Shown in pieces: positions 3,676-49,806 of a DNA stretch of 64,000 nucleotides. Source of the stretch: Narcine bancroftii (Eukaryota). Location: the NCBI RefSeq assembly GCF_036971445.1, contig NC_091478.1, positions 63,240,001 to 63,304,000 on the forward strand. Reading direction: 5' to 3'. The position numbers and the translations under genes were made by a program. Numbering within the stretch: position 1 is the stretch's first letter; each line of letters begins with the position of its first letter. Under the pieces are notes generated by a model. The model had not been told where the DNA came from. It saw nothing but the letters and a program-made list of their open reading frames with translations, and ran no database searches.

Positions 3676-3915
3676 CAGTCACCTCAAGCAAAGTAGAACA
3701 ATGCCCTGAAAAGTTGAAATGTTTCCATGTTCTCCTAGATTCCGATATTACAATAAATACCTGATATTTATTGGTGAAGAAAGGGCAAAATGCATTTATA
3801 GAACCAGAATCAGAAAACAAATTAATGCAATCAAGGGCAGGAGTACACTTGTTCTGCCGAATGTGAGCCTCACAGAGTCCGGGATGTATTACTGTCCAGT
3901 AAACAGCAACAACCT
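3676..3915 (+). pseudogene. Decayed paralogous V exon of the same receptor family
   Basis: Acceptor ttttctag|cag (same NAGNAG). Reads AVTSSKVEQ...LQ*IPDIYW*RKGQNAFIEPE../..KGRSTLVLPNVSLTESGMYYCPV, aligning with ATSNKVEQ...LQDIADVSWWKEGEKTFIEPD...AMSTFTLLNASVADIGMYYCQV. It has stops and a frameshift, has lost the first Cys and the J segment, and is flanked by LTR elements. Confidence 0.85.
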
Positions 3916-3989
3916 ATCAGTAGTTGAAGTGGCAGTTAAGTGCCTGGAAGGTTGTTCATTACTCTTTATGTGATTTCTGGTCTATCACT

Positions 3990-28883: not shown

Positions 28884-29087
28884 ATCCGGAAACGTTTCAA
28901 GCCGATTAGTGTTGGTTTGATTGAAACACACAAACATAAATGTCATCTTGAACTTGGTAGGTGGACAAAGAGAACCAGAAATGCATCGCGGTGCAATAAT
29001 CATGTGATAGACCACATCAGGGTCATACTGCCTCAAATTTCCGATGAAATCTGATTTTTTTCAACCCAAGTTACTCTCGTTTGCGAT

Positions 29088-29142
29088 ATGTTGTTCAAAG
29101 CAGTAATTCGGTACATGTCTCTTTTGGTTGTGATTTGGCAAG
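29088..29142 (+). CDS. Exon: signal peptide MLFKAVIRYMSLLVVIWQ
   Basis: ATG at 29088, hydrophobic core, donor CAAG|GTACGA at 29142/29143 (phase 1). An upstream acceptor ttttttcaacccaag| at 29070 suggests 5'UTR exons further upstream. Confidence 0.8.
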
Positions 29143-32100
29143 GTACGATCAATTTAGCAGCCACTTTGACGGCGTCAATCCGATTGCACCATATTCTACG
29201 TTCGAATGCGATTCCCATTCTCTTGCCCTTGATCCTTCGAGGTTTTGTACTCGGCGTCTCTTGGTCCGGTGTGTGCATTTGTTTTTATCGTCCTTACTTT
29301 TTCCCAGCAGCCAAAGCAACTTCGAACAAGGTGGAACAATTCGATCGGGTTGTGAAAGTTTCCAAAGGTGGAAATGTAACGATGTACTGCAAGTATAAAC
29401 TATTACAAGATATTGCTGACGTTTCCTGGTGGAAAGAGGGTGAGAAAACATTCATAGAGCCAGACAGCAAAACTCAATTTCGGGAAAACAGGGCTATGAG
29501 TACATTTACGCTCCTGAACGCTAGTGTCGCAGATATCGGGATGTATTATTGTCAAGTGAAGCATCGGCAACAAATAATCGGAAATGGAAGCGGCTCCCAG
29601 CTTATTGTGTTAAGTGAGTGGCTTTGTTTTGGGAAGTGTTTTGGGATATCAGTAAATCTCACAGATCGGTTTGATTTAAAATGTTATAAACTGGCTTAAT
29701 ACAGATGTTAACTCATTCGTTTCAGGCTTCAATAAATGCTTCAGAGGTGGAATCGAGAAATAAAATTACATAAAGTGGGCTGCACGGTTAGAGTAGCGGT
29801 TAGCACAACGCTGTTCAAGCGCCATCGGCCGGGAGCGGGATTCAAAGGAGGTTGTACGTTCTCTCCGTGTCTGCGTGGGTTTTCCCTGTGGGGTTCGATT
29901 TCCTCCCACCGTTCGAAATCCCCCCCCCCAAAAAAAAAGTAACAGGCTGGGCAGCAACTGTGAAGCGAGAAACCGTTTATTCCAACATTATTTCCGTGCT
30001 TCCTTGGATTGTCTTGTCCATTAACATGAACGTGGTGCTGGAATTCGTTGTTGATCATGTTAATTAATGGCACACCAAGCGATTGTTTTGCCTGCACCTC
30101 TTCAAATTCCCAATGCAATACTCTTGCACCGAATTCCGAAAATTGGCAGTTGTTCTTCGGGAGAGCTGAACACTAAGGAACGAGCTCACACTAAACATCC
30201 GAGACTCTCGTTTGTACAAAAGAATGTTGTATATTTATTTTTGTAGATAAAATATTTGTCCTGCATATGTATTGTTTGTCTGTACGCGTGTTATGTCTGG
30301 TTGTGTGTCTGCATGTTTTCCACCAAGGACCGGAGAACCGAGGCTGTGACTTCGGGTTCTACTTGGACAATCAGGTGACAATAAAATTGACTTCCTATGG
30401 GGTTGAAACGCAGATAAACCGCTATGAATTTGAACGCCTTTAAGGGTGAATGTTTCACCCCTATTCTTTGGGTGCCTTTCAGACAACCAAACACTGGTTG
30501 TTGCACTTGTTACTGATGACTTGCCACCAATATTGTCTAAGAAAGATTAAACATTACCTTTATACGAATAAATGTTGGGGGGCGGGGATTTTACCTGAAA
30601 TTATACTTTACTACCTTTTTAAAAAAAAATTAGATCCGTGAATATATCGTGAACAACAATTCTAGTTGTGCGACTGGGAATAAAAGCTAAGGACCTCGAT
30701 AGCAATCCCAATACAATGACATGCTACCCTGCGATGACAGGAAAGTAAAACCAAGTGAAAGAAACGATTGCTTGTGAGGGCATTTTGCAATACATCGGCA
30801 AAACAAGCTCACGATCGATTCAATTTCTGGATAAATACCAGCCGTGTCCTGAGCACAAACTCTTCCCTCTTATAAAACATCCAACTGATGAGCACTGAGC
30901 TGTCCGCCGAAAAACAGGGTTTTTTTTTTAATTTAATTCTGAAGTTAGACATGCAGAACGTTAACAAGTCCTTCTGGCCTATGTGCCGGTGCTGTCCAAA
31001 TACCCGAATCAACCTTAACCCCCGTACGTTTTCAAGGACACCAGAACACCCGGAAGGAATACCCGCAGACGCGGGGAGAGCGAAAACTCCTTAAAGGCAG
31101 CTCCAGATTCGAAGCTGGCGCTGTCACAGTCTTGAGCTAATCGTTACTCGAACCGTCCCGCGATGCCGCTTGCTCCGTGTGTGCTTCTCCCGAACATCAA
31201 CTCCTGTCGTTGGTATAGATCTGCCGATTCGCTGTTGCCCATTTTACTCTGGTGATCAAGTGCACAAAACAAGGGGGGAAATGGAGAGAAGAAATGCCCA
31301 GTGTAAAAGCAAACACAACAATCTACTCTCAAATATCGCTGCTCTACCAATCTGTCATGTCCATTAAGAACAATCACGTTTTCCTCGCCGTCGGCAGCGG
31401 AAAGATTCTGCCTCCTTGCGCTTGATTTCAATTCTTCTTTCTATCTAAGGGGGAAAGAACACCTAAATTAATGTATGATTCAGGGGTCTCCACGCGTCCG
31501 GGGACATTCATGTGGTACCAGGAGAAAGATATCATTCGATGGAGAATTCTTGCAATGAAATAGATCAAAAACATTCATGTTCGCATTCTTCTCTCTGTCG
31601 CAGCTCCCCCAACTCCCCTGAACATTGTTCCTGTTGAAACGACTTCACCGCATTCTCGGAAACTCGCGTGTAAAACGGCTCCATTTTATCCGGAGGAATT
31701 AGAAATCATCTGGCGAAGAAATAACATGGACATTCGGACCGGAGTAGAAACTGAGACACGGACGACTGCGGAAGGATTTTATGAGGCTTCGAGTGTTTTG
31801 GAAGATTCGCAGCTTGCGCTGGGCAGAGCTGTTTACACCTGCCTCGTGTCACATGAGGCTCTTACAATGCCTGCCAGCTTCTCCTACGTTTTCGAGCAAG
31901 GTAAGGTTTTAAAGCAATTTACTGGACAGTTGTCTAGACTCGAAAAAGAGAAATGTTAATAGTTTCCATTAAAAATGTTTTATGCTCAACAGCTAATACG
32001 TATTTGCATCCTGAAATGTGCTAAAAGAAGACCAGTAATTTATATTCTGCCTGCCACAAGAGGGGAAAAATGCAAACAAGAGCAAAAAAAGTCACGAGGA

Positions 32101-35100
32101 AATATTAGAGCAGATGCCCAGATACTTGGACCTTGAGGAAGACTTTAAGATTTTTTTTCAGGAGAAATATTAAATCTGACATTAGATTAAAAGGGTGCCA
32201 AACATGACACCGTGAGAGAAAGGCGTAACACGGCAGTATGAACGAAGCAACCTTAGCACAAGAGGAGAGTAGGGAGCGGAGACACAGCGCTCCCGCGGGG
32301 GTCCAACTGTCCAACTGCGTCAACTCCATCCAGGATTTAAATGCCCTGTTTCTGCCACCGCGGGGTCTACGCCCAAGATAGAAACGCCTATGATCGGCAG
32401 ACTCTGGGGAAGCAGAGGAATGACGCAGGACACCAGAAAACGGGGAGACCACCACCCTCCCTTCCCCCCACCCCGCCCCCCCCCCCCACCACCACCACCA
32501 CTCACCACGTTTGAGAAGCAGCAGAGGAGACGTGGGGGCGGCCCAGTGAGGAGATCTGCAGCTGAAGTACGCACAGGCGGCGGGCAGCTGGAGACTGGCT
32601 GAAGGGGAACCAAGTGTTAGAAGCGGAATGCGAGAGGATGCTGAGGGCGCTGAAGGTTTCCTGGCCCTGTTGTAGGTTTGGATCTGGAGCTTGGGTTGCT
32701 GATGTTTGGACTGGACTCTCTGTGGCTGAGGCAGCGCTAGAGGTGAACCCACCACGCTCGGTGACTCTGAGGGCAATTTCGGCCCATGGTGAATCTGTTT
32801 ACCTGATGGCAGACGAAAGTAAATTCCGTGCAATATTGCGCTGTTTTTATTACATTACAATAAATGAATCTAGGAAAACGCTAAATAATGACAATTTATT
32901 CAAATCCAAATCAAAGCGAAAGACTTGGACCTGGTACTGGATCCTGCGCAGTCTAATCTCATGAAGTTTTCCACTCCTATCAAACATGTTCTTATATCGT
33001 CGCAAACCAAACACTTTCCTTCATTCAGTTTGCTGTTAGTTTTTATGTATTTCTAAGATGAACAAGCAAATAGTTTGCCAATGGAACATGATGTGAAGAA
33101 ATATGTAAGTATTATTTCCGTCGAAGAATCAGAAAGTTTACACCGTTTCTGACTGTTAATTTAGTGCCAGCCGTGAAGGTTAACGTGCAAAAACAGCATG
33201 TCGTTATCAGCAAAAGTACTCCGTAAATTGTAAATACTGTCAGAGAATTTTAGTGTGAAAAGGACAACTGGAGCTTATTGAGATGAATACGAGTTGACTG
33301 TCCAGTGTTGGTCTAATATAGAATGGTAGATTGCCTGAAGATGATGAAGCAGAATGTCCAAAGATTGATTCCAAGGAAAGGGAGTGGGAAAGGGAGGGAG
33401 ACACAAAGACAGACCTAGGGGGAAAGGGACATGGGGATATGGAAAGAGAGAGAGAGACAGGGTGAGCTGGAGAGGGATGAAACTGGAGGCTGGTTCATGA
33501 CATCTGGTTGGATGGTGCCCTGATGGCATTAATATAACAAATTTCATATTCTTTCTGAGTACTCCCCAACCATAGAAGTCTGGAATCATAGAACATTTCA
33601 GCATAGAAATGGGCCCTTTTGGCAATTCTCATCTGTAAAGAACCATTTTTTCCTGCCTAGTCCCACTGACCCGTGATCAGTCCATAGCCCTCCCATCCAT
33701 GTACCTGTCCAAATTCTTCTTAAATGTTAAAATTGAGCCCACATTCAACACTTCAGCTATCACTCATTTCACACTCCCACATTTCTCTGTGTGAAGAGGT
33801 TCCCCTAAACTTTTCCCCTTTCACCCTTTACCCATGTCCTCTGGTTTGATTCTCACCAACCCTCAGTGGAAAAAGCCCATCTACATTTACTCTGTTTATA
33901 CCCCTCATAACTTTAAATATCTCTATCAAGTCTCCCCTCATTCTTCTTCTCTCCAGGGAATAAAGACCAAACCTATTTAACTTTCCCCTGTAACTCAATT
34001 CCTTAACTCCAGGCAACATCCTAATAAATCTTCTCTGCACTCTTTCTTTCTTATTGGATATCTTTCCTGTAGTTAGGTGACCAAAAGTGCACAGTATACT
34101 CCATATATGGCCATAAACAACTGTAACATAACATCCCAGCTCCAAGACTCAATACTTCCATTTTTGAAGGCCTATTTGCAAAAGCTCTCTTTACAAGCTT
34201 ATCCACCTGTGAAACCACTTTCAGGGAATTATGTATTTGTATTCCCTGATCCCTCTGTTCTTCTGCACTCTCCAGTGCCATACTATTTACTGTGTATGTC
34301 CTTTCTTGGTGTGACCTTCCAAAATGCAACACTTCACCCTTGTCTACATTAAATTCCATCTGTTATTTTCACCCCATTTATTTGCAGCTGGTCTAGATCC
34401 CTGTGCAAGCTTTGAAAACATTCTTTGCTGTCCACAACACCTCAAATCTTAGTGTTACCTTCAACCACATTATCATCCAGATCATTGATATAGATGACAA
34501 CCAACATTTGGCCCCAGCACCGTTCCCTGAGGCATACCACTAGCCACTGCCTCAAAAGTGAGAAGCATCATCCACCACTACTCTCTGGCTTCATCCGTCC
34601 AACCATTGTCAAATCCAGTTTACTAATTCACCATGAATACCTAGTATCTGAAACTTCCTGACAAACCTCCCATCCGGGATCTTTTCAAAGGCGATGTAGA
34701 AAATATCCACACCCTTTCCTTGCCTGGTAACTGCCTCAAAAAAAAACTGTAAGATTGGTTAAACACGACCGCACACACAAAGCTACGTTGACTACCCCTA
34801 ATCTGTTCCTGGCAATCCAAGTAATTATATATATGATCTGTTAAAACACCTTCCAATTATATATCTACTACTGACACCAAGCTCACCAGCCTATGATTTC
34901 CAGAGTTACTTTTGGAACCTTTTATAGACAACAGAACCATGTGAGCTCCCCTCCAATACCTGAGGCTAAGAATATTTTAAATATTCCAGCCACGGCCCCT
35001 ACAATTTCTACACTAGCCTCCCACAAACTCCAAATGAATATCTTGAAGGCCCTGAGGATTTGTCCACCCTTATTTGCTTTAAGACAGCAAGCACCTCCTC

Positions 35101-38100
35101 CTCTTTGATCTATATAGGTTCCATGGTCTCATTGCTTGTTTTCCTGACATCCCACAACTCTGTGCGCTTTTCCGTAGTGAATGCCAATGAAAAATAACCA
35201 TCTCTTTAACTCCATACAAATCTGGTCACTCTGACCTTCAGGGGGAACAATTTTGTCCTTTACTATACCTTTGCCCTTAGAATTTTCCTTCACACTGTCG
35301 GCCAAAGCAACCTCATGTCTCTTTTTACCTTCTTGGTTTCTTTCTTGAGGTTTTTCTTGCATTTAACTGTTATTCACCTCTCTCCTTCCGAACCTGATCC
35401 CCAATATCCCTCTATAACCAAGGTTCCCTGTGCCTTCTAACCTTGCCTTTGATCCTGACAGTAAAATACAAACTGTACTCTCAATATTTCACATTTGAAG
35501 GCCGTCCTTTTCATACATCCCTGAATACAACATATCCCAGACCATGCATTCTGGATCCTTTCTCATTTCCTCAAAATTGGCCTTTCTCAAATTTAGAATC
35601 TCAACCCGAGGCCCAGATTTATCCTTCTCCATAATTATCTTGAAACTAATGGTATTATGATCACTGGACCCAAAATATTCCCCTACACATACAGTACTTC
35701 TGTCACCTATCCTGTCTCATTTCCTAATAGGAGATCCAGTATTGCACTCTCTCTCATTACTACCTTTATATATTGATTTAAAAAACGTTCCTGAACACAT
35801 TTGACAAACTCAAAGCCATCCAACCCTTTAAAAGAATAGGATACCCAGTCAATATGTGGAAAGTTAAAATCTCCTACTATCACAACCTTATGTTTCTAGC
35901 AGCTGTCAGTTACCTCTCTACAGATTTGCACCTCCAATTATTGGATGGTCTATAATATATTTCCCATTCCTCAACTCCACCCAAAAAGCCTCAGTAAAGG
36001 AGCTCTCCGGTCTGTCCTGCCTGAGCACAACTGTGATATTTTCCTTGATGTGCAATGCCACTCCTCCTCTTTCATCCCCCTCATTCTATCGTGTCTAAAG
36101 CAACGGAAGCCCAGAACATTGAGCTCCCAGTCCTATCCTCCTGCAAGCAAGCTTCACTAATGGCCATTATTCCATGTTCATAACGTCATCACCACCTCAT
36201 ATTACATCTGTGCACCTTCTAACCAGATGGGATTAACATCAATTTCTTCACGTCCCGTTTGTTCCCCACCATCCCTCTCATTCCCTATCCTTATATCTTT
36301 CTTTCTTTCTCTCATTCTCTTTACCTGCCTTTTCATCTGTCTCCTTTCCTCCACATAGCCACACTCCAATAAATTTGTCCCAATAAATTCTCATATTTGC
36401 TCTCCTATTGTCCTGTCCATGTCCTTCTGCTTGTTGGACCGTTGCCCTTTTATTTAAATGCCTGCCTGCACTTTCCTCATCCATTGGCGAATGGCTCAGG
36501 CTCACAGCCTTGATTGTATATCTTTTCCACTTATGGATGCTGGGAGACCTAATAAGTTGCTCCAGCATTTTGGTGTTTTAGTTAAAAAAAAGATAATTTC
36601 TCTGAGGTCATTGTGTTTCTGACATACATCCCCAGGAAATGTAATACGTGACTCTTTCCTCCAGCAAAAAGTGGGATTATAATTGGGACAGTGGTCTTCT
36701 CTCCAAATTGCAGATGGGGAGAAACCTCTTGCTGGGATATTTATGAACCCTCATCAGATTATACTAGTAGTATATTCGATACTGAAATTGTAAGGTCTGT
36801 GGACATGAAAAGAATCAAAGAGTCTGAAAGCCAAGCCTGAAAGTGGACTTTGCAGAGAATCATCTCGAGTTGAGGCAAAATTGTTAAGCTCGATAGTTGC
36901 CAAATGCTTCATTTATTCATACTTGAGATAAAAGTCCTTTCATTCTTCTGGATGTTGTTTTAACATAGAAATCATTTAAATTTCATTTTTTGCTCCATCT
37001 TTTGTTTCCTGCACCCTTAAGGCTGAGATTCTGCTGTTATTTGTTCCACAACTTAGTCATGATATACTCCACTACCTAAACAGAGAGGCTCTCTGAGTCA
37101 TTCTGAGACATTATGGATGCCCAAGGAAATTCATAAAGATAATTCAGCTGCTCCCAATGGAATGATAGGACAGGTCGTCTGCCTTGGTGATACATCAGCT
37201 CTATTTACCATTTCTAATGGGGTGAAGCATGGCTGTGTACTAGCCACAGTCTTATTCAATCTGTTCTTCACTTACATGTTGTCATGTGGTGTCCAAGGTC
37301 TGGAGGAGGGAGTGTACATCAGGTACCAACTGGACAGCTCTCTCTTTGACCTTCGCCACTTGACTGCATGGACAAAGCACCTCTACATTATCATTCAAGA
37401 AACACATTTTGCTGATGACTGTACACTCTGCATACAAAGACAGAGATCTGCAGTTAATACTGAACAAATTCTCAGATGCTGCTATGCTCTTTCGCCTGAC
37501 CATCAACTTGAACAAGTCTGAAGTACTCCTTCAGTCCGTGCCAAACCCCAACATCATAGAACCAAAAATGACTGCAGATGACACTCAGCTGACCAATGTA
37601 AAAAGCTTCAAATACTTGGGTTCAACTCGAATGATGGGTCTTTGGACAAAGAAATTGTCTCCAGGATTCGAAAGGCTAGCCAGGCTCTGGGGTGGCTGTG
37701 TACTGGAGTGCTCAATCAACACAATGTCCACATCTCCACAAGATGAAAGTTTACATAGCAGTGGTCATCCCTTCTCTCTTCTTTTTTCTAATTTTTTTTA
37801 TTTTTCACACTATAAACCACATTGATCAAGATACATACATTTTCCTTTTCAAATATATACAGTGTCATTTTCTTCCCCCCCCCCCCCCCTCCCTCTTCCC
37901 CTCCCGCCCTCCCTACCTCCCCTCCCATTCATTTAAAGTTCAGAATCTAAGAGACATTAAACCCGTCAAACAATGTTGTCACTCAATTTAAATAAACAAG
38001 AAATTCCATTGAGTCAGTTCTTTTCATTCTCTTTTCCTTCTGTCATTTTAGGTGGTAGATGTCCCCGGTAGGTTTTCTCTATTATGTTTCATGTATGGCT

Positions 38101-41100: not shown

Positions 41101-44100
41101 TGCAAATTCACTCGCAAGCGTCAACTGATTTCGCAGTGACCGTAACTCCTCCCCACCCAGCCCCCCCCAGAAAAGATTTTAATTTTCATATACAACAAAG
41201 GTCACTCTTTTAATTCCCTCCTTACTTCCTCTCTTCCCTTTCTTTCCCTTATTAATTCTTATCTATACTCTATATATTTTCTCTTAAATACACATACACA
41301 CACACACACATATATATATATACATATATATACCCATATACACACATACATATAGTTCGTGGTCATTTTTGCTCCTGTTACATGTCTTCATCTCTCTGTC
41401 TGTTTTGTATTTGTTCTGCAAATTTTCGTGCTTCCTCCGGATCCGAGAATAGTCTGTTTTGCTGCCCCGGAATAACTATTTTAAGTACCGCTGTGTACTT
41501 TAGCATAAATTTATATCCTTTTTTTCCATAGGATTGCTTTTGCTGTATTAAACTCCTTCCTCTTCTTCAGGAGTTCAAAACTTATATCTGGATAGAAAAA
41601 ATTTTTTGACCTTTGTATTCCAGTTGCTTTTTGTCTTCTCTTACTTTCTTCATTGCTTTCTCCAATATATTTTCTCTTGTTGTATATCTTAGGAATTTTA
41701 CTAAAATGGATCTTGATTTTTGTTGTGGTTGTGGTTTAGGGGCTAATGTTCTGTGTGCCCTTTCTATTTCTATTTCCTCCTGTAATTCTGGTCTTCCTAG
41801 GACCCTGGGGATCCAATATTTTATAAATTCTCTCATATTCTTCCTTTCTTCATCTTCCTTAAGGCCCACTATCTTTATATTATTTCTTCTATTATAATTT
41901 TCCATTATATCTATCTTCTGAGCTAACAGCTCTTGTGTCTCTTTAACTTTTTTATTAGATTCTTCTAATTTCTTTTTTAAGTCATCTACTTCCATTTCTA
42001 TGGCTGTTTCTCGTTCTTCCACCTTGTCCACTCTTTTTCCTAAATCTGACATGACCATCTCTAATCTATTCATTTTTTCTTCTGTACTTTTTATTCTCCT
42101 TTTTATTTCACTAAATTCTTGTGATTGCCATTCTTTTATTGATTCCATATATTCTTCAAATAATATATATCCATTGTCTTGCCCTTCCCTTCATCTTCAA
42201 TTTCTCTGTGTTCTTCTTCTTCTTCCTCTGCGTTGGTCATCTGCTGTTTCTTTGATTTCTTTTTACTCTCTTCTTTCTTGATCTCATTGTTTTCTATGTT
42301 CTCTTCTTGTTGTTGTGCTGTGGCTGTCATTCTCAGCTGTGAAGATCGAATTCTCAGCTGGTCACCCCTCCCGTCAGTTATTTTTTTGTCTTGCGCATCG
42401 CGCATGCGCGACTCCTTCTTCTCTTCTCTTCTTCTCTTCTTCCCGTTGCTTTCGACTTTTCTTTGTTCGTTGCCATTTTCTTCCCACTTTTACTTTCACT
42501 TTATTTTAATTTTCGTGTTTGTGCCTTTGTGTTTTCTCTGTTTTTTTTAAAACTTTTCCGGAGAGGGCTGGAGTTCCCCAACCGGCCACTACTCCATCAC
42601 GTGACTCCCTCCCCCTTCTCTCTTCTATGGATGTGAGACCTGAACTCTGTACCAATGTCACATCAAACATCTGGAGCAATTCCACATGTGTGCTATCAAT
42701 TCCAGCCTTGGCATCCGTTGGCAAGACCCTATCTCCAACCTGGAGGTCTTTGGTCATGCAAAGTCCACCGACATTAAGTCCCTGCTTATCAGGAGCCAGA
42801 TGTGGTGGTGGGAAACGTCTTCAGAATGGACCACCGTATGCCTCGCTAGCAGTTCTATGGTGAACTGAATGCCAGAAGGAGACCTCAATGTCGTCCACAC
42901 AAATGATATAAAGATGCTGTGAAGGAAACCCTACAGTGCTGTGACAACCTGCCAAGAGAACTCGAAGCTGAGGCTGCTGACAGATCCCGTTGTCGAGCCC
43001 TGTGCTATGAAAACTACACCAGCTTTGAAGACAAATGCTGCCAAAAACTGATGGAAAACTGTGAACAGTGTCTCAAAGCAGCAGCCAAAGTTATTACAAA
43101 AACCAACATCCAGTGCCCCCATTGTGCCAGACTGGGACTGCAAAGTCACCTTTGCCTCCACAGATGAAATGCACAACAATGTCTTCTTCGAACTGAAGGA
43201 CTACCAATCATATAAATCCATTAATTAATTTATTAAATATCTGTGTGTGTGTGTGTGTGTGTGTGTGCGTGCATGTGTGTGTGTGTGTGTGTGTGTGTGT
43301 AGCAGTGACTACACTGCTCCTGCAATAACACACACATCCAGACAGGTTGAGCTCAGTGAGCAGCTGCTGGGCTGCACTTATACTCCCCGTCCGGACCTGG
43401 CTGAGAACCGCGCTAGAGGTCGCTGATGTCACCTGGGCATCATGTGGTCCCCCAGCATGGGTTTCTGAGCCCCATGCTGGAAGGAAGGGAAACCCCCGAC
43501 AGCGCCATTTCAGCTGGGTGCCCCACTGCGTGGCTGACAAGCGGGGCCGGTTCACCTGCCTTGTGGTGAGCCACCACACATTTCCCTTCCCCCCAGAACC
43601 GGCATCAATGTCCTTTATCACCAGGCAGCCTTTCTTCTTGGGCTGAGCAATGACCATGGGCTTGGTGGGATCGAGGTGCACCGGCATCAGCCTGTCCATG
43701 GAAAACAGCTCCCTCCTGCCACCAATATCCAGTGTTGATGTCGAGCCAGAATGCTGCACAACCCTGTACGGCCCCTCATATGATCACTGCAGAGGAGCCG
43801 CGGTGGGGCTCCACTGAACGAAAATGTACTCCACAGAAAGAAGTTCGCCAGGAACGTGAGATGGGCGGGTGCCATGACTGGGCAGCAGTGGGGGGTTTGA
43901 ACAAGTCCAAGTGTGCCCTGAGCTGAAAAAGTAGGTCGCATGGTGGGGTGGTCCATGAGGTCAGTTCCTGGATTCGATGGCCGTGGCCACTATGATGCTG
44001 ATCTGGGCTCTAGTGTCAACGAGGAACTGCTGGCCACTGACTGAGTTCTGCAGGTAAAGGTGCTGTGTCCTTGGCCAGCCGCCAAAGCCATTAACAGCGG

Positions 44101-47100
44101 CCAGCTTGGTCGTTTCCCTGGATTGAGCAGGGCTGATGACACTTCCAAGCCTTGACTCCCCAGCGCTGGTGGTAGAATCAAAGGCCTGAAGTGTATGCTG
44201 TGGCCTTGGTTATGCTCTTGGGAGCCCCTTCAGGGGCCGGGTGCTCTGCTGCAGTGCTAGAGGTGGGATTGGCATGGTCATGTCCATGCCTCGTGACCTG
44301 CTGGACCATTGAGCCCTCTGGGGATCATGCAAGCTATAGCTCTTGGACCTTCTGGGTGACTTTCCTTGGGTTGGTGAAGCTCTCCTGGACCCGCAGAGGC
44401 TGGATTTCCCCAAGCATATGGTCGAGAAAGATGCACTCAAAGAGTGGGCAGTTGGTGTGCTCACCCATGAGTGCGAGCATCTCATCCATCAGCTCCATCG
44501 GGGACCTGTCCTTCAGGGTGTCGAGGTGCAGCATCCTAGCGGCACACTGGTGTCTGGATAGTCTGAGGGACCCGGTAACCACTTGCTTGATGGTCTCGTA
44601 TTTGTCCTCGGCGGGTGAGTGCTGAACAAGTTGCAGCATGTGTCTGGCAGTGGCCTGGTCCAGGGCAGTGACCACATGGTAGAATTTGGTCATGTCGGAT
44701 GAAATCTTGCAGAGGTGAAACTGGATCTCCACATGGCCAAACCAGGTCTTTGGCTCCTGAACCCAGAATTCAGGCAGTTTTACAGCTATAGTGTTGATCC
44801 CAGGCTCACTCATGATGGGTTCAAAGATATTTGAACCATTCGGGATCACCAATTGTAGTGACAGCTACACTGCTCCTACAATAACACATACAACCAGACG
44901 GATTGAGCTCAGTGAGCAGACTCTGGTTTATTGCAGGCTGCTGGGCTGCACTTATACTCCCCGCCTGGTTCTGGCTGAGAATCGTGCTGGAGGGCACTGA
45001 CATCACCCGGGCGTCACGTGGTCCCCCAGCGTGGGTTTCTGAGCCCCATGCTGGAAGGAAGGGAAACCCCTGACAGTGCCATTTTGGCCGGCTGCCCCAC
45101 AATGTGGCTTACATGTGGGGCCGCTTCGCCTGCTTTGTGGTGAGCCACCACATATGTTTATATTATAATTACATATATATAAATAGAGAGCTATATTTAT
45201 GGCCAAATGTCACATTATGTATCCTAATGCTCGATATAAGTGCCTTGTCTGTCTTTGTATGTTCTATAGCTTTGTAGCCACAAGTACTTGTTGAGACAGG
45301 TGCTGGGAGTCAATGCATGGAATGCATTTGGAAAATTTTTTGAAGTTGATGTCAAACTCCATGGAAAATCCCCAGCCCCTTGAAAGGAAAATGAAAACAT
45401 TATTTCATCTTAATGAATAATACATGAATGTTTCATCTGTAAATGTACTCTTTAATTTACAATTTCTATGTAGTTCTATTTCTTCCAATCTTCATACAGT
45501 AAAGATTGAAAGACACGTTAAAATGTTCTGCCTTGTTAACCTTAATCCATGTAAATGAGTATATGTATCACGGTTTCTTTTTTTTTCCACCAGATTCAAA
45601 AAGCACTTATGAAAGTCTTATTTTTCCATGTATAGTAGGAGGATCAGCAATTCTTGTTCTGATCATAATTTTGACCATAGTTGCATTAAAGAGAAAACCA
45701 GGTAAGAACCTTACAAAATTGAACAAATGTTCCCATTTCCTAATTCCATTGATGGAAGAAAGAAGCATACATTTGGCATTTAACACCATCATCCCCTCAA
45801 AATTGATCAGCAAACTCCAAGAACTGGGACTCAACACCAAATTGTGCAATTAAATCCAGACCACAATTAATGAGCTTGGTAAGAAAGTGTCCTCCACAAT
45901 CTCCATTACTACTGGAGCACTGGAGGGCTGTGTTCTTAGCCCCCTGCTCTACTCACTTTATGCCTATGATTGTGTGGCTCAGTATGACAATAACACCACC
46001 TGCAAGTTCACTGGTGATTCCACAGTAGTGGCCGTATAAAAAGGGGCTATGTGCCAGCAAATAGGAGAGAGATTGAAAACCTGGGTGAATGGGGCACCAA
46101 CAATCTCACACTCAATGTCACCAAAACCAAGGAGCTAACTGTTAACTTCAGGAAGGGAACACCAGAATGTACAATGCATTGATCATTGGGAGATCAGAGG
46201 TAGAGAGGGTGAGCAAATTTAAGTTCTTTGTAGTCACAATCGTGGAGGATCTTTTCTGTACCTAATACAAATGCCACCATGGAGGAAGTACATCAGTGCC
46301 TCTACTTCCTCAGAAGTTTGCAAAGGTTTGGCATGACATCACCAACACTGGAAAATTTCACAGATGCGTGGTGGAAAGTGTTCTGACTAGATGCATCACA
46401 GTCTGGTATGGGGGGTCACCAATACATCTGTGTGTGAAGCCCTGCAAAAGGTAGTGGACACAGCTCAGGACATCACTAGTAAAACCCTCCCCAACATTGG
46501 GAACATCTATAGGGAACACATCATGGGAGAGTAGCAGCAATTGTCAAGGATTCACACCACCTTGCACATGCTCTGTTCTCGATGACACCATCAGGAAAGA
46601 GGTATAGACACCACAGGACTTGCACCGCTTGCTTCAGGAACAGCTACTACCCGTCCACCACCAGACTCTTCAACAATAAACTCAATCAGGGACTCATTTA
46701 AGTACTCTTATTTTTGCACTTTATTGATTTTTTTCCCCCTGTATCTGTATGGCACAGTTTGTTGACATTTATTTATTTGTTTACATGTGTATATTGAGTC
46801 AGTTTTTTTCACACTGCCAATAAATGGTAATTCTGCCATTCCTGCAGTAGAAAGCATCTCAGGGTTGTATGTGATGTTATACATGTACTCTGGCAATAAC
46901 TCGGAAGTCATTAAGGAGAGAAACAAATATTTTCAAGCATTGACAGTGGAGAATACCAGTTACAAACTGGAATACAAATACCATTATTTCACCTTCCCAT
47001 TCGAATCATTCAATATTACCTTGAACTTGCTTTCCAAACACTCAAACAACGTTTACAGCGCTAGCAAGCCAGGTTCGAATCCGGGGTTGTCTGTAAGGAT

Positions 47101-49077
47101 TTCTTCCCGTGAATGCGTGGGTTTTCTTCCGGGGGCTCCGGTTTCCTCCCAGCCTTCAAAACGTACCGGGGCTCGTAGGTGAATTGGATGTGATTGGGCT
47201 GCATGGGCTCGTGGGCCGGAAGGTCCTGTTACCGTGCTGTACTGTATGTCTAAAATTACATATAGAAAATGTCAGATTTTTAGCCATAAATAATTTGGGA
47301 TTGATCTTGATTTTAGGTTAAAAAAAACAGTATTAGTTTTCTTGGTGATACAATTAGTCATTTTCAAGTGCAACACAGCTGTTGACGTGCATGTTCAACC
47401 ATGGACACAGGAAGCAGCACATTCTTTTGCCAAAAATAGTGTTCCAAAAATATCTTCGAGTAGCTGTTACCAGCGTTCCGGTGTTCGGACTTTGTAATTT
47501 AATTATAATGACAATTCAAGTGGATAACTTTCACCTTCCTAAAAAGCAATCCTGTCATTGAAAATGGGTTTGTTCCCCTCCTTAGGTCGTGATACCATCG
47601 CCGTGGAAGAAATCCGAACTGGAAATCCGGTAGGTTAATGTGATTTTCCACCCCCGAGGGCTGGACAAGTCGAGAAATGTTATGATCTGCAAAGAATATA
47701 TAAATTTAATTCCTTAAAAATTGCAGCGTAGAATGAAACGATGCTGCCTGTTGATTGCATCGCTAGAACAAGTGTCTCCGCTTATAAATCCGCTGCCTCA
47801 GAGTTCCGATGATGCGGCTTCAGTCCTGACTTATTCCTGGAGTTTACAGCTTCTTCCTTCATGGAAGTACCTGTGATTGGTGAGAGCTCTCTGTTAGGTC
47901 CCCAATATGTGGACATTGAAGATGGTAACCGTTACCCTAAAGTACAGGAAAGTAGGGAAATGGGGATAACCGTGGAGCAACGAAGGTGGCCGAAACCGAG
48001 AAACTAATACAACTGGTAAAGCACGTTTCCAAATTGTTCACTTAAAATCAATGTAGATTAAAAATATCCACAAACAAAAATGAACGCTGGAGCTGACATG
48101 CCTCACGTCTTCCCCGAATGTCGTTCTGGGCATATCCTTGAGTGCACCCAGCATTAAATTGTGCACTTTTTGGGGGGTTTATCCTCGCCTTGTTTAAGGC
48201 TTCAGGCTCAGTTTCCCTTCATGGAACTACACCAGACCCACTGCTAGCATTATAATGTTATCCTTCTAACAGGCTGGACAAGAGTCACCGGGACATGGCT
48301 CTGCACTAAATTTGAGCGAGGACAGGAGATTTCCCAAAGTTCGACACCAGGAAGAGCAGGTAAAGCCGGGGGCTTGGAGTAAAGAACATAGAAAATGATC
48401 GTTGCAATACCTGAAATTCATGTAGAGGTATTTGAAATAAGCGCTTGGAAATGTAAGCGTTCCACATATTTTGTGTCCTAAGCATTCCTTTAAGTACTTA
48501 GACGCCGGCACATGCTGTTCCGCGTGTTCAGCAGGTCCAATTCTAGCTTTCTTTGCCAACCGAGGGGTATTGATTCATCGCAAAGACATGCGGGTTGATG
48601 GCCACTGTACAGAGCCACAAGTATGTAGGTGACTGGTGGACTCTGAGGGGAAGACAGTGATGACGGCAATCTGGTGAAAATTAAATGGGATTATTTTAAA
48701 TGGGCGCATGCTGGTGGTCGCAGACTCGTTTCCACAATATATGGCATTCTTTACCTCTATATGACATTAGTTCCTGTACCAAGAAAATCTTTTAGGAACA
48801 GAGGAAAATAATTTAATGCTCATCTCTGTGTAAACTGGCTGCGAATTTAGCGTGATAAAACTGAGTTCATTGCAATTTTTATTTTAAAATCGATCGGCTG
48901 GACAATGGACTAACGGCCGATATTGAATTACTTTCACAGACTAAAACAGGAGGAGCGGAAAAACTGACTTACGCCTCTCTGCAGCTTCAAAAGTCCAATA
49001 AAACCACGGCATTTAACGAGAAAGACGCCCGTGCGGTGTATGCAGGTGTAAAGGTTTCAAGAGAAGCGAGAAGCTGA
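29088..49077 (+). CDS. Six-exon IgSF receptor gene (leader-VJ-C1-TM-cytoplasmic ITIM), 315 aa; SIRP-like / non-rearranging antigen-receptor-like. join(29088..29142,29308..29613,31604..31900,45594..45701,47586..47629,48940..49077)
   Basis: All introns are GT-AG with compatible phases (1,1,1,1,0). Exon lengths 55+306+297+108+44+138 = 948 nt, with no internal stop. The one-domain-per-exon, phase-1 layout is typical of IgSF genes. Confidence 0.88.
29308..29613 (+). CDS. Exon: germline-joined VJ-type Ig domain (AAKATSNKVEQ...VTMYC...SWWKEG...DIGMYYCQVKHRQQIIGNGSGSQLIVL)
   Basis: Acceptor tttttcccag|cag (NAGNAG). B-strand Cys, C-strand Trp, DxGxYxC and a J-like GxGSxLxV are all in one exon. Donor A|GTGAGT, phase 1. 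Confidence 0.95.
29782..29915 (+). mobile_element. tRNA-derived V-SINE/HE1-like SINE
   Basis: gcacggttagagtagcggttagc head and the V-domain-like core gtacgttctctccgtgtctgcgtgggtttccc. Further copies at about 30950-31170 (-) and 47045-47250 (+). Confidence 0.7.
31604..31900 (+). CDS. Exon: C1-set Ig domain (TPPTPLNIVP...LACKTAPFYPEELEIIW...GFYEASSVL...YTCLVSHEAL...FEQ)
   Basis: Acceptor ttctctctgtcgcag|. C1 signatures CxxxxFYPxxxxxxW and YxCxVxHxxL. Donor G|GTAAGG, phase 1. Confidence 0.95.
33575..36170 (-). mobile_element. Degenerate CR1 LINE in intron 3
   Basis: MEFNVDK.EVLHFG, ERVQRRFIRMLPG, LYSLERRRMRGDLIE. Flanked by Penelope remnants at about 33330-33550 and 36200-36580. Confidence 0.88.
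36636..36793 (+). pseudogene. Possible decayed alternative TM exon with TM Arg (activating-type); speculative
   Basis: Non-TE island between CR1/Penelope and RTE, with acceptor ...catccccag|. Allowing frameshifts, it reads GNVIRDSFLQQ/KWDYNWDSGLLSKLQMGRNLLLG/IFM/TLI/IILVVYSILKL*. Confidence 0.3.
37080..43200 (+). mobile_element. RTE LINE (37080-37782 and 42613-43200) split by an L1 insertion
   Basis: GVKHGCVLA, FADDC, and VVIPSL|..GCETW across the L1. 14-bp TSD cccttctctcttct at 37769-37782 and 42613-42626. Confidence 0.88.
37783..42612 (-). mobile_element. Young L1 with 5'UTR, ORF1 and ORF2; internal ORF2 deletion at about 39818
   Basis: ORF1 ENYNRRNNIKIVGLKE / IERAHR. ORF2 endonuclease starts at 40877, RT SLFADD. 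The N-terminal RT motifs (DAEKAFD, QGCP) are missing between ...YKVEK and RTENKIKG. Confidence 0.93.
43242..43299. repeat. (TG)n microsatellite at the LTR insertion site
   Basis: Direct read. Confidence 0.9.
43298..45152 (-). mobile_element. Internally deleted Gypsy element with both LTRs (43298-43578 and 44854-45152), PBS, gag and integrase tail
   Basis: Direct repeats of about 290 bp, TGT...ACA. PBS tggtgatcccg. Gag AVKLPEFWVQEPKTWF. PPT adjacent to the left LTR. RT absent. Confidence 0.9.
45594..45701 (+). CDS. Exon: stalk + transmembrane (DSKSTYESLIFPCIVGGSAILVLIIILTIVALKRKP)
   Basis: Acceptor ttttttccaccag|. Uncharged hydrophobic stretch of about 23 aa followed by a KRK stop-transfer. 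Donor G|GTAAGA, phase 1. Confidence 0.9.
45750..46880 (+). mobile_element. Rex-Babar/L2-like LINE in intron 4
   Basis: AFNTIIPSKLISKL, GCVLSPLLYSL, LNVTKTKEL. Confidence 0.85.
47586..47629 (+). CDS. Exon: short cytoplasmic exon (GRDTIAVEEIRTGNP)
   Basis: Acceptor ttcccctccttag|, donor CCG|GTAGGT. It converts phase 1 to phase 0, exactly as needed to join the TM exon to the ITIM exon. Confidence 0.78.
48940..49077 (+). CDS. Terminal exon with ITIM LTYASL and distal motif AVYAGV (TKTGGAEKLTYASLQLQKSNKTTAFNEKDARAVYAGVKVSREARS*)
   Basis: Acceptor ttactttcacag|, phase 0. Perfect (I/V/L/S)xYxx(L/V) ITIM. TGA at 49075-49077. Confidence 0.88.
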   Translation, partial: TKTGGAEKLTYASLQLQKSNKTTAFNEKDARAVYAGVKVSREARS

Positions 49078-49300
49078 GAATCAAATTAAGTTTCCATTCC
49101 TAGGCTACGAATGAATAGAGATCAAAGATGTTTATTTTTAATCGTTACAGTGCAGACTACGAAACGACAAGAGAAACAACACACACACAGGCGAAGAAAG
49201 CGAAGTGGTCATTTTTACCTCGGACTGTGATAAATTTCTCACTGACCGTATCAACACAGCCCTCGTTTTCCGATCTCTGCTAACATGAAACGGGCTGCGA

Positions 49301-49306
49301 AATAAA
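49301..49306 (+). terminator. Candidate polyadenylation signal AATAAA of the receptor gene
   Basis: First AATAAA after the stop, about 225 nt downstream. A second one lies at about 49542. Confidence 0.55.
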
Positions 49307-49806
49307 GTTCTGCACTTTCTCGTTACTGGGAGGGAGATATTATCAAAATGTCGTGAAAACTTTGTTCGTGAATGGTGGCTGATACATTAATGCTAATTAA
49401 TTCTTGGGTTTTTTTTCCAATGCAGATATTTGTGTTTAATTAAAGCAGCTGCCTGTTCACCTCATTCCATGGCTGGACGTCCCTCGTTTGTCACAAAAAC
49501 GAGTACGGGCAGGAACCAAGGGAAGAAAATCGTGGGCTCGCAATAAATACTTTAACAGCGTTTCGCAAATAATTGTCGGACTTCAGTGCCCTCGGGGCAG
49601 AGGGAACTGTCAGCGGGGACAGTCGGGACAGCGGGAGCTGTCGGGGTCGCGGGGGCTGTCAGCGGGGACCGGCGGGACACATTGGACACATCCAATTTCT
49701 TCCAAAAGAAGTTAACATTTTTCATTAACTGTGACATGAATGCCCAATTGCAAGACCCACTACCCACTACATACCCTCTACATACTGTCGAAATAATATA
49801 TCATTA

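What the first reader, a model, noticed from the sequence alone, without database searches (positions are those of the whole stretch)
29088..49077. Non-rearranging VJ-C1 receptor with an ITIM tail: a TCR/Ig-light-chain-shaped ectodomain wired as an inhibitory receptor
Seen: an intact 315-aa gene with leader, a V domain carrying its own J-like strand (IIGNGSGSQLIVL) in the same exon, exactly one C1-set domain, an uncharged TM and a tail with LTYASL plus AVYAGV. No RSS follows the V. Known: C1-set domains are largely restricted to Ig/TCR, MHC/b2m, tapasin, SIRP and some B7 members. SIRPs are V-C1-C1, NKp30 and the CD28 family are VJ-only, and teleost NITRs lack C1. Germline VJ-C1 genes are the proposed precursor architecture of rearranging receptors. 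Inference: this is a member of a poorly characterised, probably elasmobranch, VJ-C1-ITIM receptor family that recruits SHP-1/2. It is either a one-C1 SIRP lineage or a relic of the pre-RAG antigen-receptor gene.
Basis: partly seen in the sequence, partly recalled or inferred. Interest (0 to 1): 0.9.

Follow-up and report, generated by a model that had tools for sequence, protein, structure and literature searches.

The report
Ray inhibitory V-C1 immune receptor gene
This is a real, spliced gene of the lesser electric ray for an "off-switch" membrane receptor whose outer part resembles a ready-joined antibody light chain. It is already in RefSeq under misleading automatic names and is one more member of a large, unstudied receptor family found in all cartilaginous fish.

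Summary
A seven-exon gene on the + strand (29088-49077) encodes leader, a germline-joined VJ-type domain, one C1-set domain, an uncharged TM and a tail with LTYASL and AVYAGV. No RSS is present.

The correct product is 344 aa, not 315. The gene is already a RefSeq model of Narcine bancroftii (XP_069757172.1 and isoforms), named "SIRP-like" or "NCR3LG1-like".

Spliced contigs from four runs of one study show the TM-to-tail junctions. The V-C1 and C1-TM junctions rest on contig sizes and on the RefSeq model.

It belongs to a family present in rays, skates, sharks and a chimaera. The family has ITIM-tailed members and short-tailed members with a TM arginine, and a tail module with a fixed 23-residue Tyr-Tyr spacing.

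Per V-C unit the family is about as far from Ig lambda as from SIRP-alpha or UrIg2. The best fold match is B7-H6. No orthology to any named family is shown, and synteny could not be checked.

SHP recruitment is inferred, not tested.

The scan has met paralogues of this family before elsewhere in this genome. Verdict: an ordinary-to-interesting new member of a known kind.

The parts
29088..29142 (+). Exon 1: start codon and signal peptide (18 codons + 1 nt, phase 1 split leader)
   Evidence: Translates to MLFKAVIRYMSLLVVIWQ, identical to P0004 residues 1-18. GT donor at 29143.
29308..29613 (+). Exon 2: germline-joined VJ-type Ig domain. The G strand carries GSGSQLIV (GxGxxLxV). A NAGNAG alternative acceptor at 29311 gives isoform X2.
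   Evidence: Pfam V-set 8.8e-9, ig 5.7e-9, I-set 8.6e-8. AF2 pLDDT >90, with the G strand broken by a bulge at residues 112-114 and no C'' strand. No RSS.
31604..31900 (+). Exon 3: single C1-set Ig domain (…VYTCLVSHEAL…), phase 1-1
   Evidence: Pfam C1-set 1e-9. PDB sequence hits are Ig constant domains and UrIg2. VIA matches to MHC II membrane-proximal domains, C-lambda and IgNAR C domains, Z 14-15.3 at rmsd 1.3-2.3.
45594..45701 (+). Exon 4: stalk + uncharged transmembrane helix (…FPCIVGGSAILVLIIILTIVAL-KRKP). An alternative acceptor at 45636 gives isoform X3. Skipping the exon gives isoform X4.
   Evidence: AF2 helix 222-252. Spliced joint 45701->47586 in contigs of 4 runs. Contigs carrying this exon extend 601-869 nt further 5'.
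47586..47629 (+). Exon 5: cytoplasmic (GRDTIAVEEIRTGNP)
   Evidence: Joints 45701->47586 and 47629->48273, GT..AG, in all 4 runs. Matches P0004.
48273..48359 (+). Exon 6: cytoplasmic, 29 aa (AGQESPGHGSALNLSEDRRFPKVRHQEEQ).
   Evidence: Exact peptide match. Joints 47629->48273 and 48359->48940 in all 4 runs.
48940..49077 (+). Exon 7: the signalling module and the stop codon. It holds the ITIM LTYASL (48964-48981), 23 residues Tyr-to-Tyr, then AVYAGV (49033-49050). The 3'UTR runs on to at least 49400.
   Evidence: Sequence. The module with exactly 23-residue spacing recurs in 21 of 34 motif pairs across the family. Contigs cover 48937-49400.

Best explanation
The locus is an expressed gene of Narcine bancroftii for a type I membrane receptor. 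The protein has a signal peptide, one compact V-type domain with a germline J-like G strand, one C1-set domain, an uncharged TM helix and a ~90-aa tail.

The last exon carries a bipartite tyrosine module: ITIM LTYASL, then AVYAGV 23 residues later. The gene is the inhibitory-type member of a batoid subclade. That subclade belongs to a large paired-receptor family specific to cartilaginous fish, with ITIM/ITSM-tailed forms and short-tailed forms that have an arginine in the TM.

Likely mechanism (inferred, not shown):
1. The V domain binds a still unknown ligand.
2. A Src-family kinase phosphorylates Y310 and Y333.
3. The doubly phosphorylated module engages the tandem SH2 domains of SHP-1/SHP-2-type phosphatases.
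4. These dampen signalling from nearby activating receptors.

Alternative splicing that skips the TM exon (RefSeq isoform X4) would give a soluble form.
For: Gene structure and expression:
- The seven GT..AG exons translate exactly to RefSeq XP_069757172.1.
- Three TM-to-tail splice joints are seen in contigs of 4 runs.
- The same runs hold 0.23-0.26 of the words of 29000-32000, where the exons make up 0.22.
- TM-bearing contigs carry 601-869 nt more at the 5' end, against 658 nt expected for L+V+C1.

Domains:
- Pfam V-set/ig and C1-set.
- AF2 ectodomain pLDDT >90.

Family:
- 124 representatives below 1e-30.
- Members in rays, skate, sharks and chimaera.
- The query lies in a 99%-supported batoid clade. 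That clade joins horn shark P0019 and catshark P0020 in a 15-row set with 99% support; the order of branching inside it is unresolved.
- P0019 aligns to the query over almost its full length, tail included (44% identity).

Signalling logic:
- LTYASL fits [SIVL]xYxx[ILV].
- The ITIM-23 aa-xxYxx[VIL] module has fixed spacing in 21 of 34 cases, including Callorhinchus.
- Horn shark P0053 (ITIM tail) and P0045 (TM Gly->Arg, short tail) are 87% identical.
- Other members have Arg-bearing TM segments with short tails.
- From my own knowledge, not a tool: Tyr-Tyr spacings of about 24-26 residues occur in PD-1 and SIRP-alpha, which bind SHP phosphatases. The SIRP review PMC12975943 supports the ITIM to SHP-1/2 step and the paired alpha/beta logic.
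Against: - No phosphorylation, SHP binding, ligand or cell type is known.
- The second motif has Ala, not Thr/Ser/Ile/Val/Leu, at -2. It fits neither consensus.
- The V-C1 and C1-TM junctions were not displayed directly in my one read-laying run.
- The runs are only guessed to be RNA, although GT..AG-spliced contigs argue for cDNA.
- Most close batoid relatives have short tails without a charged TM, so the 'paired' picture is clearer in sharks than in this subclade. Some of those may be incomplete models.
- The best fold match is a ligand (B7-H6), not a receptor.
Confidence: 0.72

Rival explanations
1. It is a B7-family-type ligand (B7-H6/NCR3LG1-like), not a receptor. The V-C1 ectodomain would be displayed to an NKp30- or CD28-type receptor on another cell, and the tail would play only a minor part.
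For: - B7-H6 is the top structural match (Z 16.6, rmsd 3.7, 188 residues, 22% identity). PD-L2, butyrophilins, B7-H3, ICOS-L and PD-L1 follow.
- NCBI names two isoforms and several orthologues 'NCR3LG1-like'.
- From my own knowledge: human B7-H6 is V-C1-TM with an ITIM-like tail motif.
Against: - Z values for B7, SIRP-gamma (13.8), UrIg2 (13.5) and Fab chains (about 14.4) lie within about 3 units. Fold does not discriminate between them.
- No B7 chain is among the 60 best sequence matches in PDB, whereas Ig lambda, UrIg2 and SIRP-alpha are.
- The family has paired ITIM and TM-Arg forms and a rigidly spaced two-tyrosine module. That is the logic of receptors.
- The G strand has a J-like GxG bulge.
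Confidence: 0.13
2. It is a specific relic of the pre-RAG antigen-receptor gene. That would make it a non-rearranging sister of Ig light chains/TCR chains, a third UrIg-like lineage, with the ITIM tail added secondarily.
For: - The best two-domain sequence alignment of the family profile in PDB is one contiguous V-J-C alignment to an Ig lambda chain (72.9 bits). UrIg2 V-C1 scores 58.2 bits.
- Foldseek's top 50 matches are all Fab chains, as far as the chain labels show their light chains.
- The gene has a single-exon VJ with a split leader, like UrIg/UrIg2 (PMC12227049).
- Several members are auto-named 'immunoglobulin lambda-1 light chain-like'.
Against: - SIRP-alpha scores about the same (68.3 bits), so closeness to Ig is not specific.
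- PDB is dominated by Fabs, which biases the Foldseek ranking.
- The V domain is short and lacks C''.
- There is one C domain, against many in UrIg/UrIg2.
The MHC findings returned by the look-up (8 of 14 shown) all lie on other pieces of the genome (an unchecked lead).
Confidence: 0.1
3. It is a true one-C1 orthologue or co-orthologue of tetrapod SIRP (same lineage, one C1 domain lost) and binds a CD47-like ligand.
For: - Outside cartilaginous fish, the nearest named sequence found is turtle SIRP-alpha (1.9e-31); a teleost 'hypothetical protein' scored higher (7.6e-38).
- Human SIRP-alpha 2wng aligns over V plus the first C1 (profile 24-216).
- The family shows SIRP-like paired logic with ITIM and TM-basic forms (PMC12975943).
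- 'SIRP-like' is the commonest NCBI name among members.
Against: - BLASTP of the protein against turtle SIRP-alpha aligns only 67 residues of C1 at 25% (E 3e-6).
- The SIRP sequences sit on a long branch outside the whole family. They were set as the outgroup there, so that position is not a result of the tree.
- The defining V-C1-C1 architecture is not met.
- Ig lambda scores as well as SIRP.
- Synteny was not tested.
Confidence: 0.05

Closest known systems
SIRP family (SIRP-alpha/beta/gamma; PTPNS1)
   Same: - N-terminal V domain with a germline J-like GxGxxLxV strand, followed by a C1-set domain.
- Type I membrane protein.
- Inhibitory form with an ITIM tail, and related forms with a basic TM residue and a short tail (paired receptors).
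- Nearest named relative outside cartilaginous fish in the word-seeded search.
   Different: - One C1 domain, not two.
- Very low sequence identity: only C1 aligns by BLASTP, at 25%.
- The V domain is shorter, with no C''.
- The tail is a single ITIM + 23 aa + Tyr module. From my own knowledge, SIRP-alpha has four tyrosines.
- Ligand unknown.
- Orthology and synteny are not shown.
B7-H6 (NCR3LG1) and the B7/butyrophilin family
   Same: - Two-domain V + C ectodomain, TM and cytoplasmic tail.
- Best structural match of the AF2 model (Z 16.6).
- NCBI's automatic name for two isoforms.
   Different: - No B7 chain appears among the best PDB sequence matches.
- The family has a J-like bulged G strand.
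- The family has paired ITIM and TM-Arg members and a fixed-spacing ITIM/ITSM module, which are features of receptors and not of B7 ligands.
UrIg / UrIg2 (non-rearranging shark antigen-receptor-like genes; PMC12227049, PDB 9dmx)
   Same: - Single-exon VJ with a split leader, followed by C1-type domain(s).
- No RSS.
- Present in cartilaginous fish.
- UrIg2 is the second-best PDB sequence match of the family profile (7.9e-38 for the whole chain; 58 bits for V-C1).
   Different: - UrIg2 has 9-11 C domains and forms disulfide-linked homodimers, and the paper reports no ITIM. This gene has one C1 and an ITIM tail.
- UrIg/UrIg2 are single genes linked to the MHC or the Ig/TCR complex. This is a multigene family whose linkage I could not test.
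Ig lambda light chain / TCR chains (rearranging antigen receptors)
   Same: - V-J-C1 order.
- One contiguous 72.9-bit alignment of the family profile to a lambda chain, through FGTGTKVTVL and C-lambda.
- Foldseek's top 50 matches are all Fab chains, as far as the chain labels show their light chains.
   Different: - V and J are fused in the germline in one exon, with no RSS.
- TM and ITIM tail.
- Short V without C''.
- Pairing into dimers is not supported by anything here.
PD-1-type ITIM-ITSM tails and teleost NITRs (functional analogues)
   Same: - An ITIM followed about 23-25 residues later by a second tyrosine motif.
- A multigene family with inhibitory and activating (charged-TM) members, as in NITRs.
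   Different: - PD-1 and the CD28 family have a single V and no C1 (PMC11599192).
- From my own knowledge: NITRs have V + I-type domains and no C1.
- No sequence relationship was tested or claimed.

Membership tests
ITIM-bearing inhibitory IgSF receptor (functional class) | Cytoplasmic [S/I/V/L]xYxx[I/V/L] motif | tested here: met
   LTYASL at residues 308-313 (48964-48981). Conserved as LTYA[AST]L across the family.
ITIM-bearing inhibitory IgSF receptor (functional class) | Uncharged TM segment (no adaptor-pairing basic residue) | tested here: met
   CIVGGSAILVLIIILTIVAL has no K/R/D/E.
ITIM-bearing inhibitory IgSF receptor (functional class) | Recruitment of SHP-1/SHP-2 (or SHIP) on phosphorylation | not testable with these tools
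   Inferred only from the motif and from the fixed 23-residue Tyr-Tyr spacing.
SIRP family | Ectodomain of one V-set and two C1-set domains | tested here: not met
   Only one C1 exon lies between V and TM. The SIRP definition is taken from PMC12975943.
SIRP family | Sequence grouping with SIRPs to the exclusion of other V-C1 proteins | tested here: inconclusive
   Turtle SIRP-alpha V+d2 scores 68.3 bits against the family profile, Ig lambda 72.9 and UrIg2 58.2. BLASTP aligns C1 only, at 25%. No curated outgroup set was available.
SIRP family | Conserved synteny with the SIRP locus; CD47 binding | not tested
B7 family / B7-H6 | V + C two-domain ectodomain with B7-like fold and geometry | tested here: met
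   VIA: B7-H6 Z 16.6, PD-L2 15.9, BTN 15.4-15.7. This is a resemblance of fold only.
B7 family / B7-H6 | Sequence relationship to B7-H6; binding to NKp30 | tested here: inconclusive
   No B7 chain is among the 60 best PDB sequence matches for V, C1 or the family profile. Fabs crowd these lists. Binding is not testable.
UrIg / UrIg2 | Single-exon VJ with split leader, non-rearranging | tested here: met
   Leader split in phase 1. V and the J-like strand lie in one exon. No RSS.
UrIg / UrIg2 | Multiple C1-type domains (UrIg2: 9-11) and linkage to the MHC or the Ig/TCR complex | tested here: not met
   One C1 domain only. The description comes from PMC12227049. Linkage was not testable.
Rearranging Ig/TCR genes | Separate V and J segments flanked by RSS | tested here: not met
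   V and J are contiguous in exon 2. No heptamer/12- or 23-spacer/nonamer in 29000-32000, and one weak chance site in the whole window.
Chondrichthyan V-C1 paired-receptor family (unnamed) | VJ-type domain with GNG(S/T)GSxLxV, C1 starting PPTPL and ending VYTCxVSH, one TM | tested here: met
   Alignments A1 and A2. Profile hits. Tree placement in a 99%-supported batoid clade.

The most novel reading that the evidence does not exclude
The whole family, this gene included, is an independent surviving non-rearranging sister lineage of antigen-receptor light-type chains (VJ-C1). It would have been kept in all cartilaginous fish as an innate paired inhibitory/activating receptor system, making it a third 'Ur' lineage beside UrIg and UrIg2. 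It would show what a germline VJ-C1 receptor did before or beside RAG invasion.
Probability: 0.1. Interest if true: 0.85.

Novelty: new member of a known kind. Interest (0 to 1): 0.45.

Why it matters
For this single gene, the result is mainly a corrected and RNA-supported annotation of an inhibitory immune receptor that databases mislabel.

The family is of more interest:
- It is a large, unnamed set of germline-joined VJ + C1 receptors in chimaeras, sharks, skates and rays.
- It has inhibitory and putative activating partners, and a rigid ITIM-23 aa-Tyr module.
- It is a cartilaginous-fish counterpart, in logic, of SIRPs, KIR/LILR and teleost NITRs.
- By sequence it stands about as near to Ig lambda chains as to SIRP.
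- It therefore bears on two questions: which VJ-C1 genes surrounded the birth of rearranging receptors, and how innate paired receptors arose.
- It gives concrete genes for ligand hunts and SHP/DAP12 tests in sharks and rays.

Tried and rejected
- Homodimer test (complex prediction, residues 22-235, two copies): no verdict (score 0.00). This is no evidence for or against pairing.
The cluster's chromosomal neighbourhood (MHC paralogon, SIRP region or Ig/TCR complex) stays unknown.
- Curated domain phylogeny against IgL, TCR, B7-H6, tapasin and UrIg: not possible. No tool gave me those sequences as usable ids. Only turtle SIRP-like proteins and one teleost protein served as outgroup.
- Exon-only searches with the search for homologous proteins cannot reach full-length kin. 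I used the in-frame ORF 29088-29696 (leader + retained intron + V) with region 74-175 to stay by reference.
- I sent no self-joined spliced model to any search. Full-length searches used the database protein P0004 that a tool returned. The only join was a local check that the seven exons translate to P0004.
- Literature: no paper in the searchable library describes this family. UrIg/UrIg2, the SIRP review and the CD28-family survey are the nearest.
- Protein Atlas: only generic Ig clusters (C1-set/CD80-like, CD200-like, SIRP fragment, tapasin-related). No decision from it.
- Pseudogene reading rejected: the frame is intact, the transcripts are spliced, and the tail module is conserved.
- My first coordinates for the V exon end (29614) and the TM exon end (45702) were off by one. 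They are corrected to 29613 and 45701.
Full report
**1. What is in the sequence**

On the + strand there are seven exons:

| Exon | Coordinates | Content |
|---|---|---|
| 1 | 29088-29142 | leader |
| 2 | 29308-29613 | VJ domain |
| 3 | 31604-31900 | C1 domain |
| 4 | 45594-45701 | stalk + TM |
| 5 | 47586-47629 | cytoplasmic |
| 6 | 48273-48359 | cytoplasmic |
| 7 | 48940-49077 | cytoplasmic, with the stop codon |

- All six introns are GT..AG, and the leader, VJ, C1 and TM exons all end in phase 1.
- The exons sum to 1035 nt and translate exactly to a database protein of 344 aa, P0004.
- Its 315-aa length is 29 aa short. This equals exon 48273-48359, which it evidently missed.
- Pfam calls exon 2 an Ig domain, with V-set (8.8e-9), ig (5.7e-9) and I-set (8.6e-8) nearly tied. 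It calls exon 3 C1-set (1e-9).
- The V exon ends ...IIGNGSGSQLIVL. GSGSQLIV fits the J signature GxGxxLxV, and the sawfish homologue has GSGTQLTV.
- No RSS-like site lies in 29000-32000.
- The TM (CIVGGSAILVLIIILTIVAL) has no charged residue.
- The last exon encodes LTYASL, a canonical ITIM. Twenty-three residues further, Tyr to Tyr, it encodes AVYAGV, which fits neither the ITIM nor the ITSM consensus because of Ala at -2.

**2. It is an annotated gene of the lesser electric ray**

- I searched with the in-frame ORF 29088-29696, scored on the V part only, so that the query stayed a window reference.
- This returned 100%-identical RefSeq proteins of Narcine bancroftii: XP_069757172.1 (X1, 344 aa), X2 (343 aa), X3 (330 aa), X4 (308 aa) and X5 (301 aa).
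- X2 arises from a NAGNAG acceptor at the V exon. X3 uses an acceptor inside the TM exon. X4 skips the TM exon.
- NCBI calls some isoforms 'tyrosine-protein phosphatase non-receptor type substrate 1-like' (SIRP-like) and others 'natural cytotoxicity triggering receptor 3 ligand 1-like' (B7-H6-like).
- I sent no self-joined model to any search. Full-length queries used P0004 as returned by the tools.

**3. RNA evidence**

- Four runs of one study hold 0.23-0.26 of the sampled words of 29000-32000. The three exons there make up 0.22 of that stretch.
- I laid their contigs on 45400-49400. All four runs show GT..AG joints that resolve to 45701->47586, 47629->48273 and 48359->48940.
- Contigs that carry the TM exon have 601, 841 and 869 further letters on the 5' side, off the stretch. 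L+V+C1 is 658 nt.
- The junctions leader-V, V-C1 and C1-TM were not displayed to me. They rest on these sizes and on the RefSeq models.
- The runs are only guessed to be RNA, but spliced contigs argue for cDNA.
- TM-bearing contigs have lower depth (11-34) than last-exon contigs (79-166). This is a weak hint that the TM-less isoform is common.

**4. Structure**

- AlphaFold2 with a 27-sequence family alignment gives pLDDT >90 over residues about 25-220, a TM helix at 222-252 and a disordered tail.
- The V domain has A, A', B, C, D, E and F strands and a G strand broken at residues 112-114. This is the GxG bulge typical of J regions. There is no C'' strand.
- W59 to C100 is 41 residues. The domain is therefore a compact V/I-intermediate. 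Single-domain matches include the IgNAR V domain (Z 14.7) and CD79b (Z 13.8).
- The C1 domain superposes on MHC II membrane-proximal domains, C-lambda, IgNAR C and CH3 domains (Z 14-15.3, rmsd 1.3-2.3).
- For the two domains together, B7-H6 is first (Z 16.6, rmsd 3.7, 188 residues). PD-L2, butyrophilins and B7-H3 follow. SIRP-gamma scores 13.8 and UrIg2 13.5.
- Foldseek's top 50 matches are all Fab chains, as far as the chain labels show their light chains.
- These values are too close together to assign a family.

**5. Family**

- A profile of 11 batoid homologues was searched against 1.84 billion representatives. It gave 124 hits below 1e-30, many of them single-stretch V-C1-TM proteins of 220-450 aa.
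- Names and species show members in:
  - rays: Mobula, Hypanus, Hemitrygon, Pristis, Narcine;
  - a skate: Amblyraja;
  - many sharks: Heterodontus, Scyliorhinus, Mustelus, Heptranchias, Carcharodon, Chiloscyllium, Hemiscyllium, Stegostoma, Pristiophorus;
  - the chimaera Callorhinchus.
- Their automatic names are inconsistent: SIRP-like, SIRP-beta-like, NCR3LG1-like, Ig lambda-like, tapasin-like, TCR beta-like, MHC II-like, PD-L1-like and CD276-like.
- In a quick ML tree of 71 V-C1 regions, the query lies in a 99%-supported clade of 13 batoid sequences and is sister (94) to Mobula/Hypanus genes.
- That clade joins Heterodontus P0019 and Scyliorhinus P0020 in a 15-row set with 99% support; the order of branching inside it is unresolved.
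- P0019 aligns to the query from residue 44 to the C-terminus, tail included (44% identity).
- The V domain is a little less conserved than C1: 59% against 65% within batoids, and 38% against 43% family-wide.

**6. Signalling logic of the family**

- Long-tailed members carry LTYA[AST]L-type ITIMs followed by (T/A)xYAx[VIL].
- The Tyr-Tyr distance is exactly 23 residues in 21 of 34 motif pairs. Callorhinchus and this gene are among them.
- Other members have short tails and an arginine in the TM. Examples are Scyliorhinus P0020, Chiloscyllium P0038 and Heterodontus P0051.
- Heterodontus P0053 (two ITIMs) and P0045 (TM ...AGCARGAL..., short tail) are 87% identical over 278 residues.
- This is the pattern of paired inhibitory/activating receptors, as in SIRP-alpha/beta (PMC12975943).
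- This gene is of the inhibitory type. SHP recruitment is my inference.

**7. Relation to known families**

- Outside cartilaginous fish, the word-seeded profile search found a teleost 'hypothetical protein' (7.6e-38) and then turtle SIRP-alpha (1.9e-31), the nearest named protein.
- Per V-C unit, the family profile scores:
  - 72.9 bits on an Ig lambda chain, in one alignment through FGTGTKVTVL and C-lambda;
  - 58.2 bits on UrIg2 V-C1;
  - 68.3 bits on turtle SIRP-alpha V+d2.
- BLASTP of the protein against turtle SIRP-alpha aligns only 67 residues of C1 at 25%.
- SIRP's defining V-C1-C1 architecture is not met.
- UrIg/UrIg2 (PMC12227049) share the single-exon VJ and split leader. They differ in having many C domains.
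- I therefore file the gene in an unnamed chondrichthyan V-C1 paired-receptor family. It works like SIRP-alpha or PD-1, and its deeper affinity (SIRP, B7 or antigen-receptor stem) is open.
- No paper in the searchable library describes the family.

**8. Earlier scan notes**

- The scan has met paralogues of this family before in this genome: 227 kb and 64 kb upstream, about 17 kb downstream of the window's end, and on other pieces.
- I used these notes as leads only.
- My own searches agree with their family-level reading. They add the fixed-spacing tail module, the TM-Arg partners and the per-unit score comparison.

**9. Limits**

- The homodimer prediction gave no verdict.
- No curated outgroup tree could be built.
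- The ligand, the expressing cells and phosphatase binding are all unknown.

Noticed in passing
window 3709-3933 (+): A decayed copy of a family V exon. It is 66% identical in DNA to exon 2 over 231 nt and 47% identical in protein to a Mobula homologue over 34 residues. It is broken by stops and frameshifts, and no C1, TM or tail exon was found near it. It looks like a relic of local gene duplication in the cluster.
   Followed up: partly
window 31901-45593 (intron 3, 13.7 kb): The intron between the C1 and TM exons is filled with LINE-type retroelement ORFs on the minus strand, some of them long and open (375 aa at 38291-39418; ORF1-like 188 aa at 41582-42148). Near-identical ORF fragments recur in inverted orientation at 60.4-64.0 kb. 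For example, 37117-37521 (+) and 37409-37825 (+) recur at 63581-63985 (-) and 63277-63693 (-).
   Followed up: no
window 45668-47275: Intronic repeat fragments attract contigs of very high depth (hundreds to about 14,000) in all four runs, with many odd joints. These are expressed transposon families from elsewhere in the genome, not this gene.
   Followed up: no
window 53417-54575 (+): A GC-rich (0.55) block whose ORFs read as degenerate repeats rich in Pro, Gly, Arg and Leu (…GPGPGPLLLSLCPDWGRRLPL…). It is followed at 54511-55398 by a reverse-transcriptase fragment. It looks like a repeat array inside or beside a retroelement.
   Followed up: no
window 29306-29311 and 45634-45636: Two alternative acceptors explain RefSeq isoforms. 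A NAGNAG (cagcag) at the V exon adds or drops one Ala (X1/X2). An AG inside the TM exon removes the stalk and the boundary Cys (X3). Skipping the TM exon keeps the frame (X4) and would give a soluble protein that still carries the tail sequence.
   Followed up: partly
P0004 residue 232 (window about 45625-45633) and family alignment A2: A cysteine at the outer edge of the TM (FPCIVGG; GC[AV]xGG in relatives) is present in 44 of 81 family members, next to a small-residue GxxGG patch. It might mediate a disulfide or TM-helix dimer. This was not tested.
   Followed up: partly
window 43229-43300: A (TG/CA)n-type microsatellite inside intron 3, with a second related stretch near 41290-41350.
   Followed up: no
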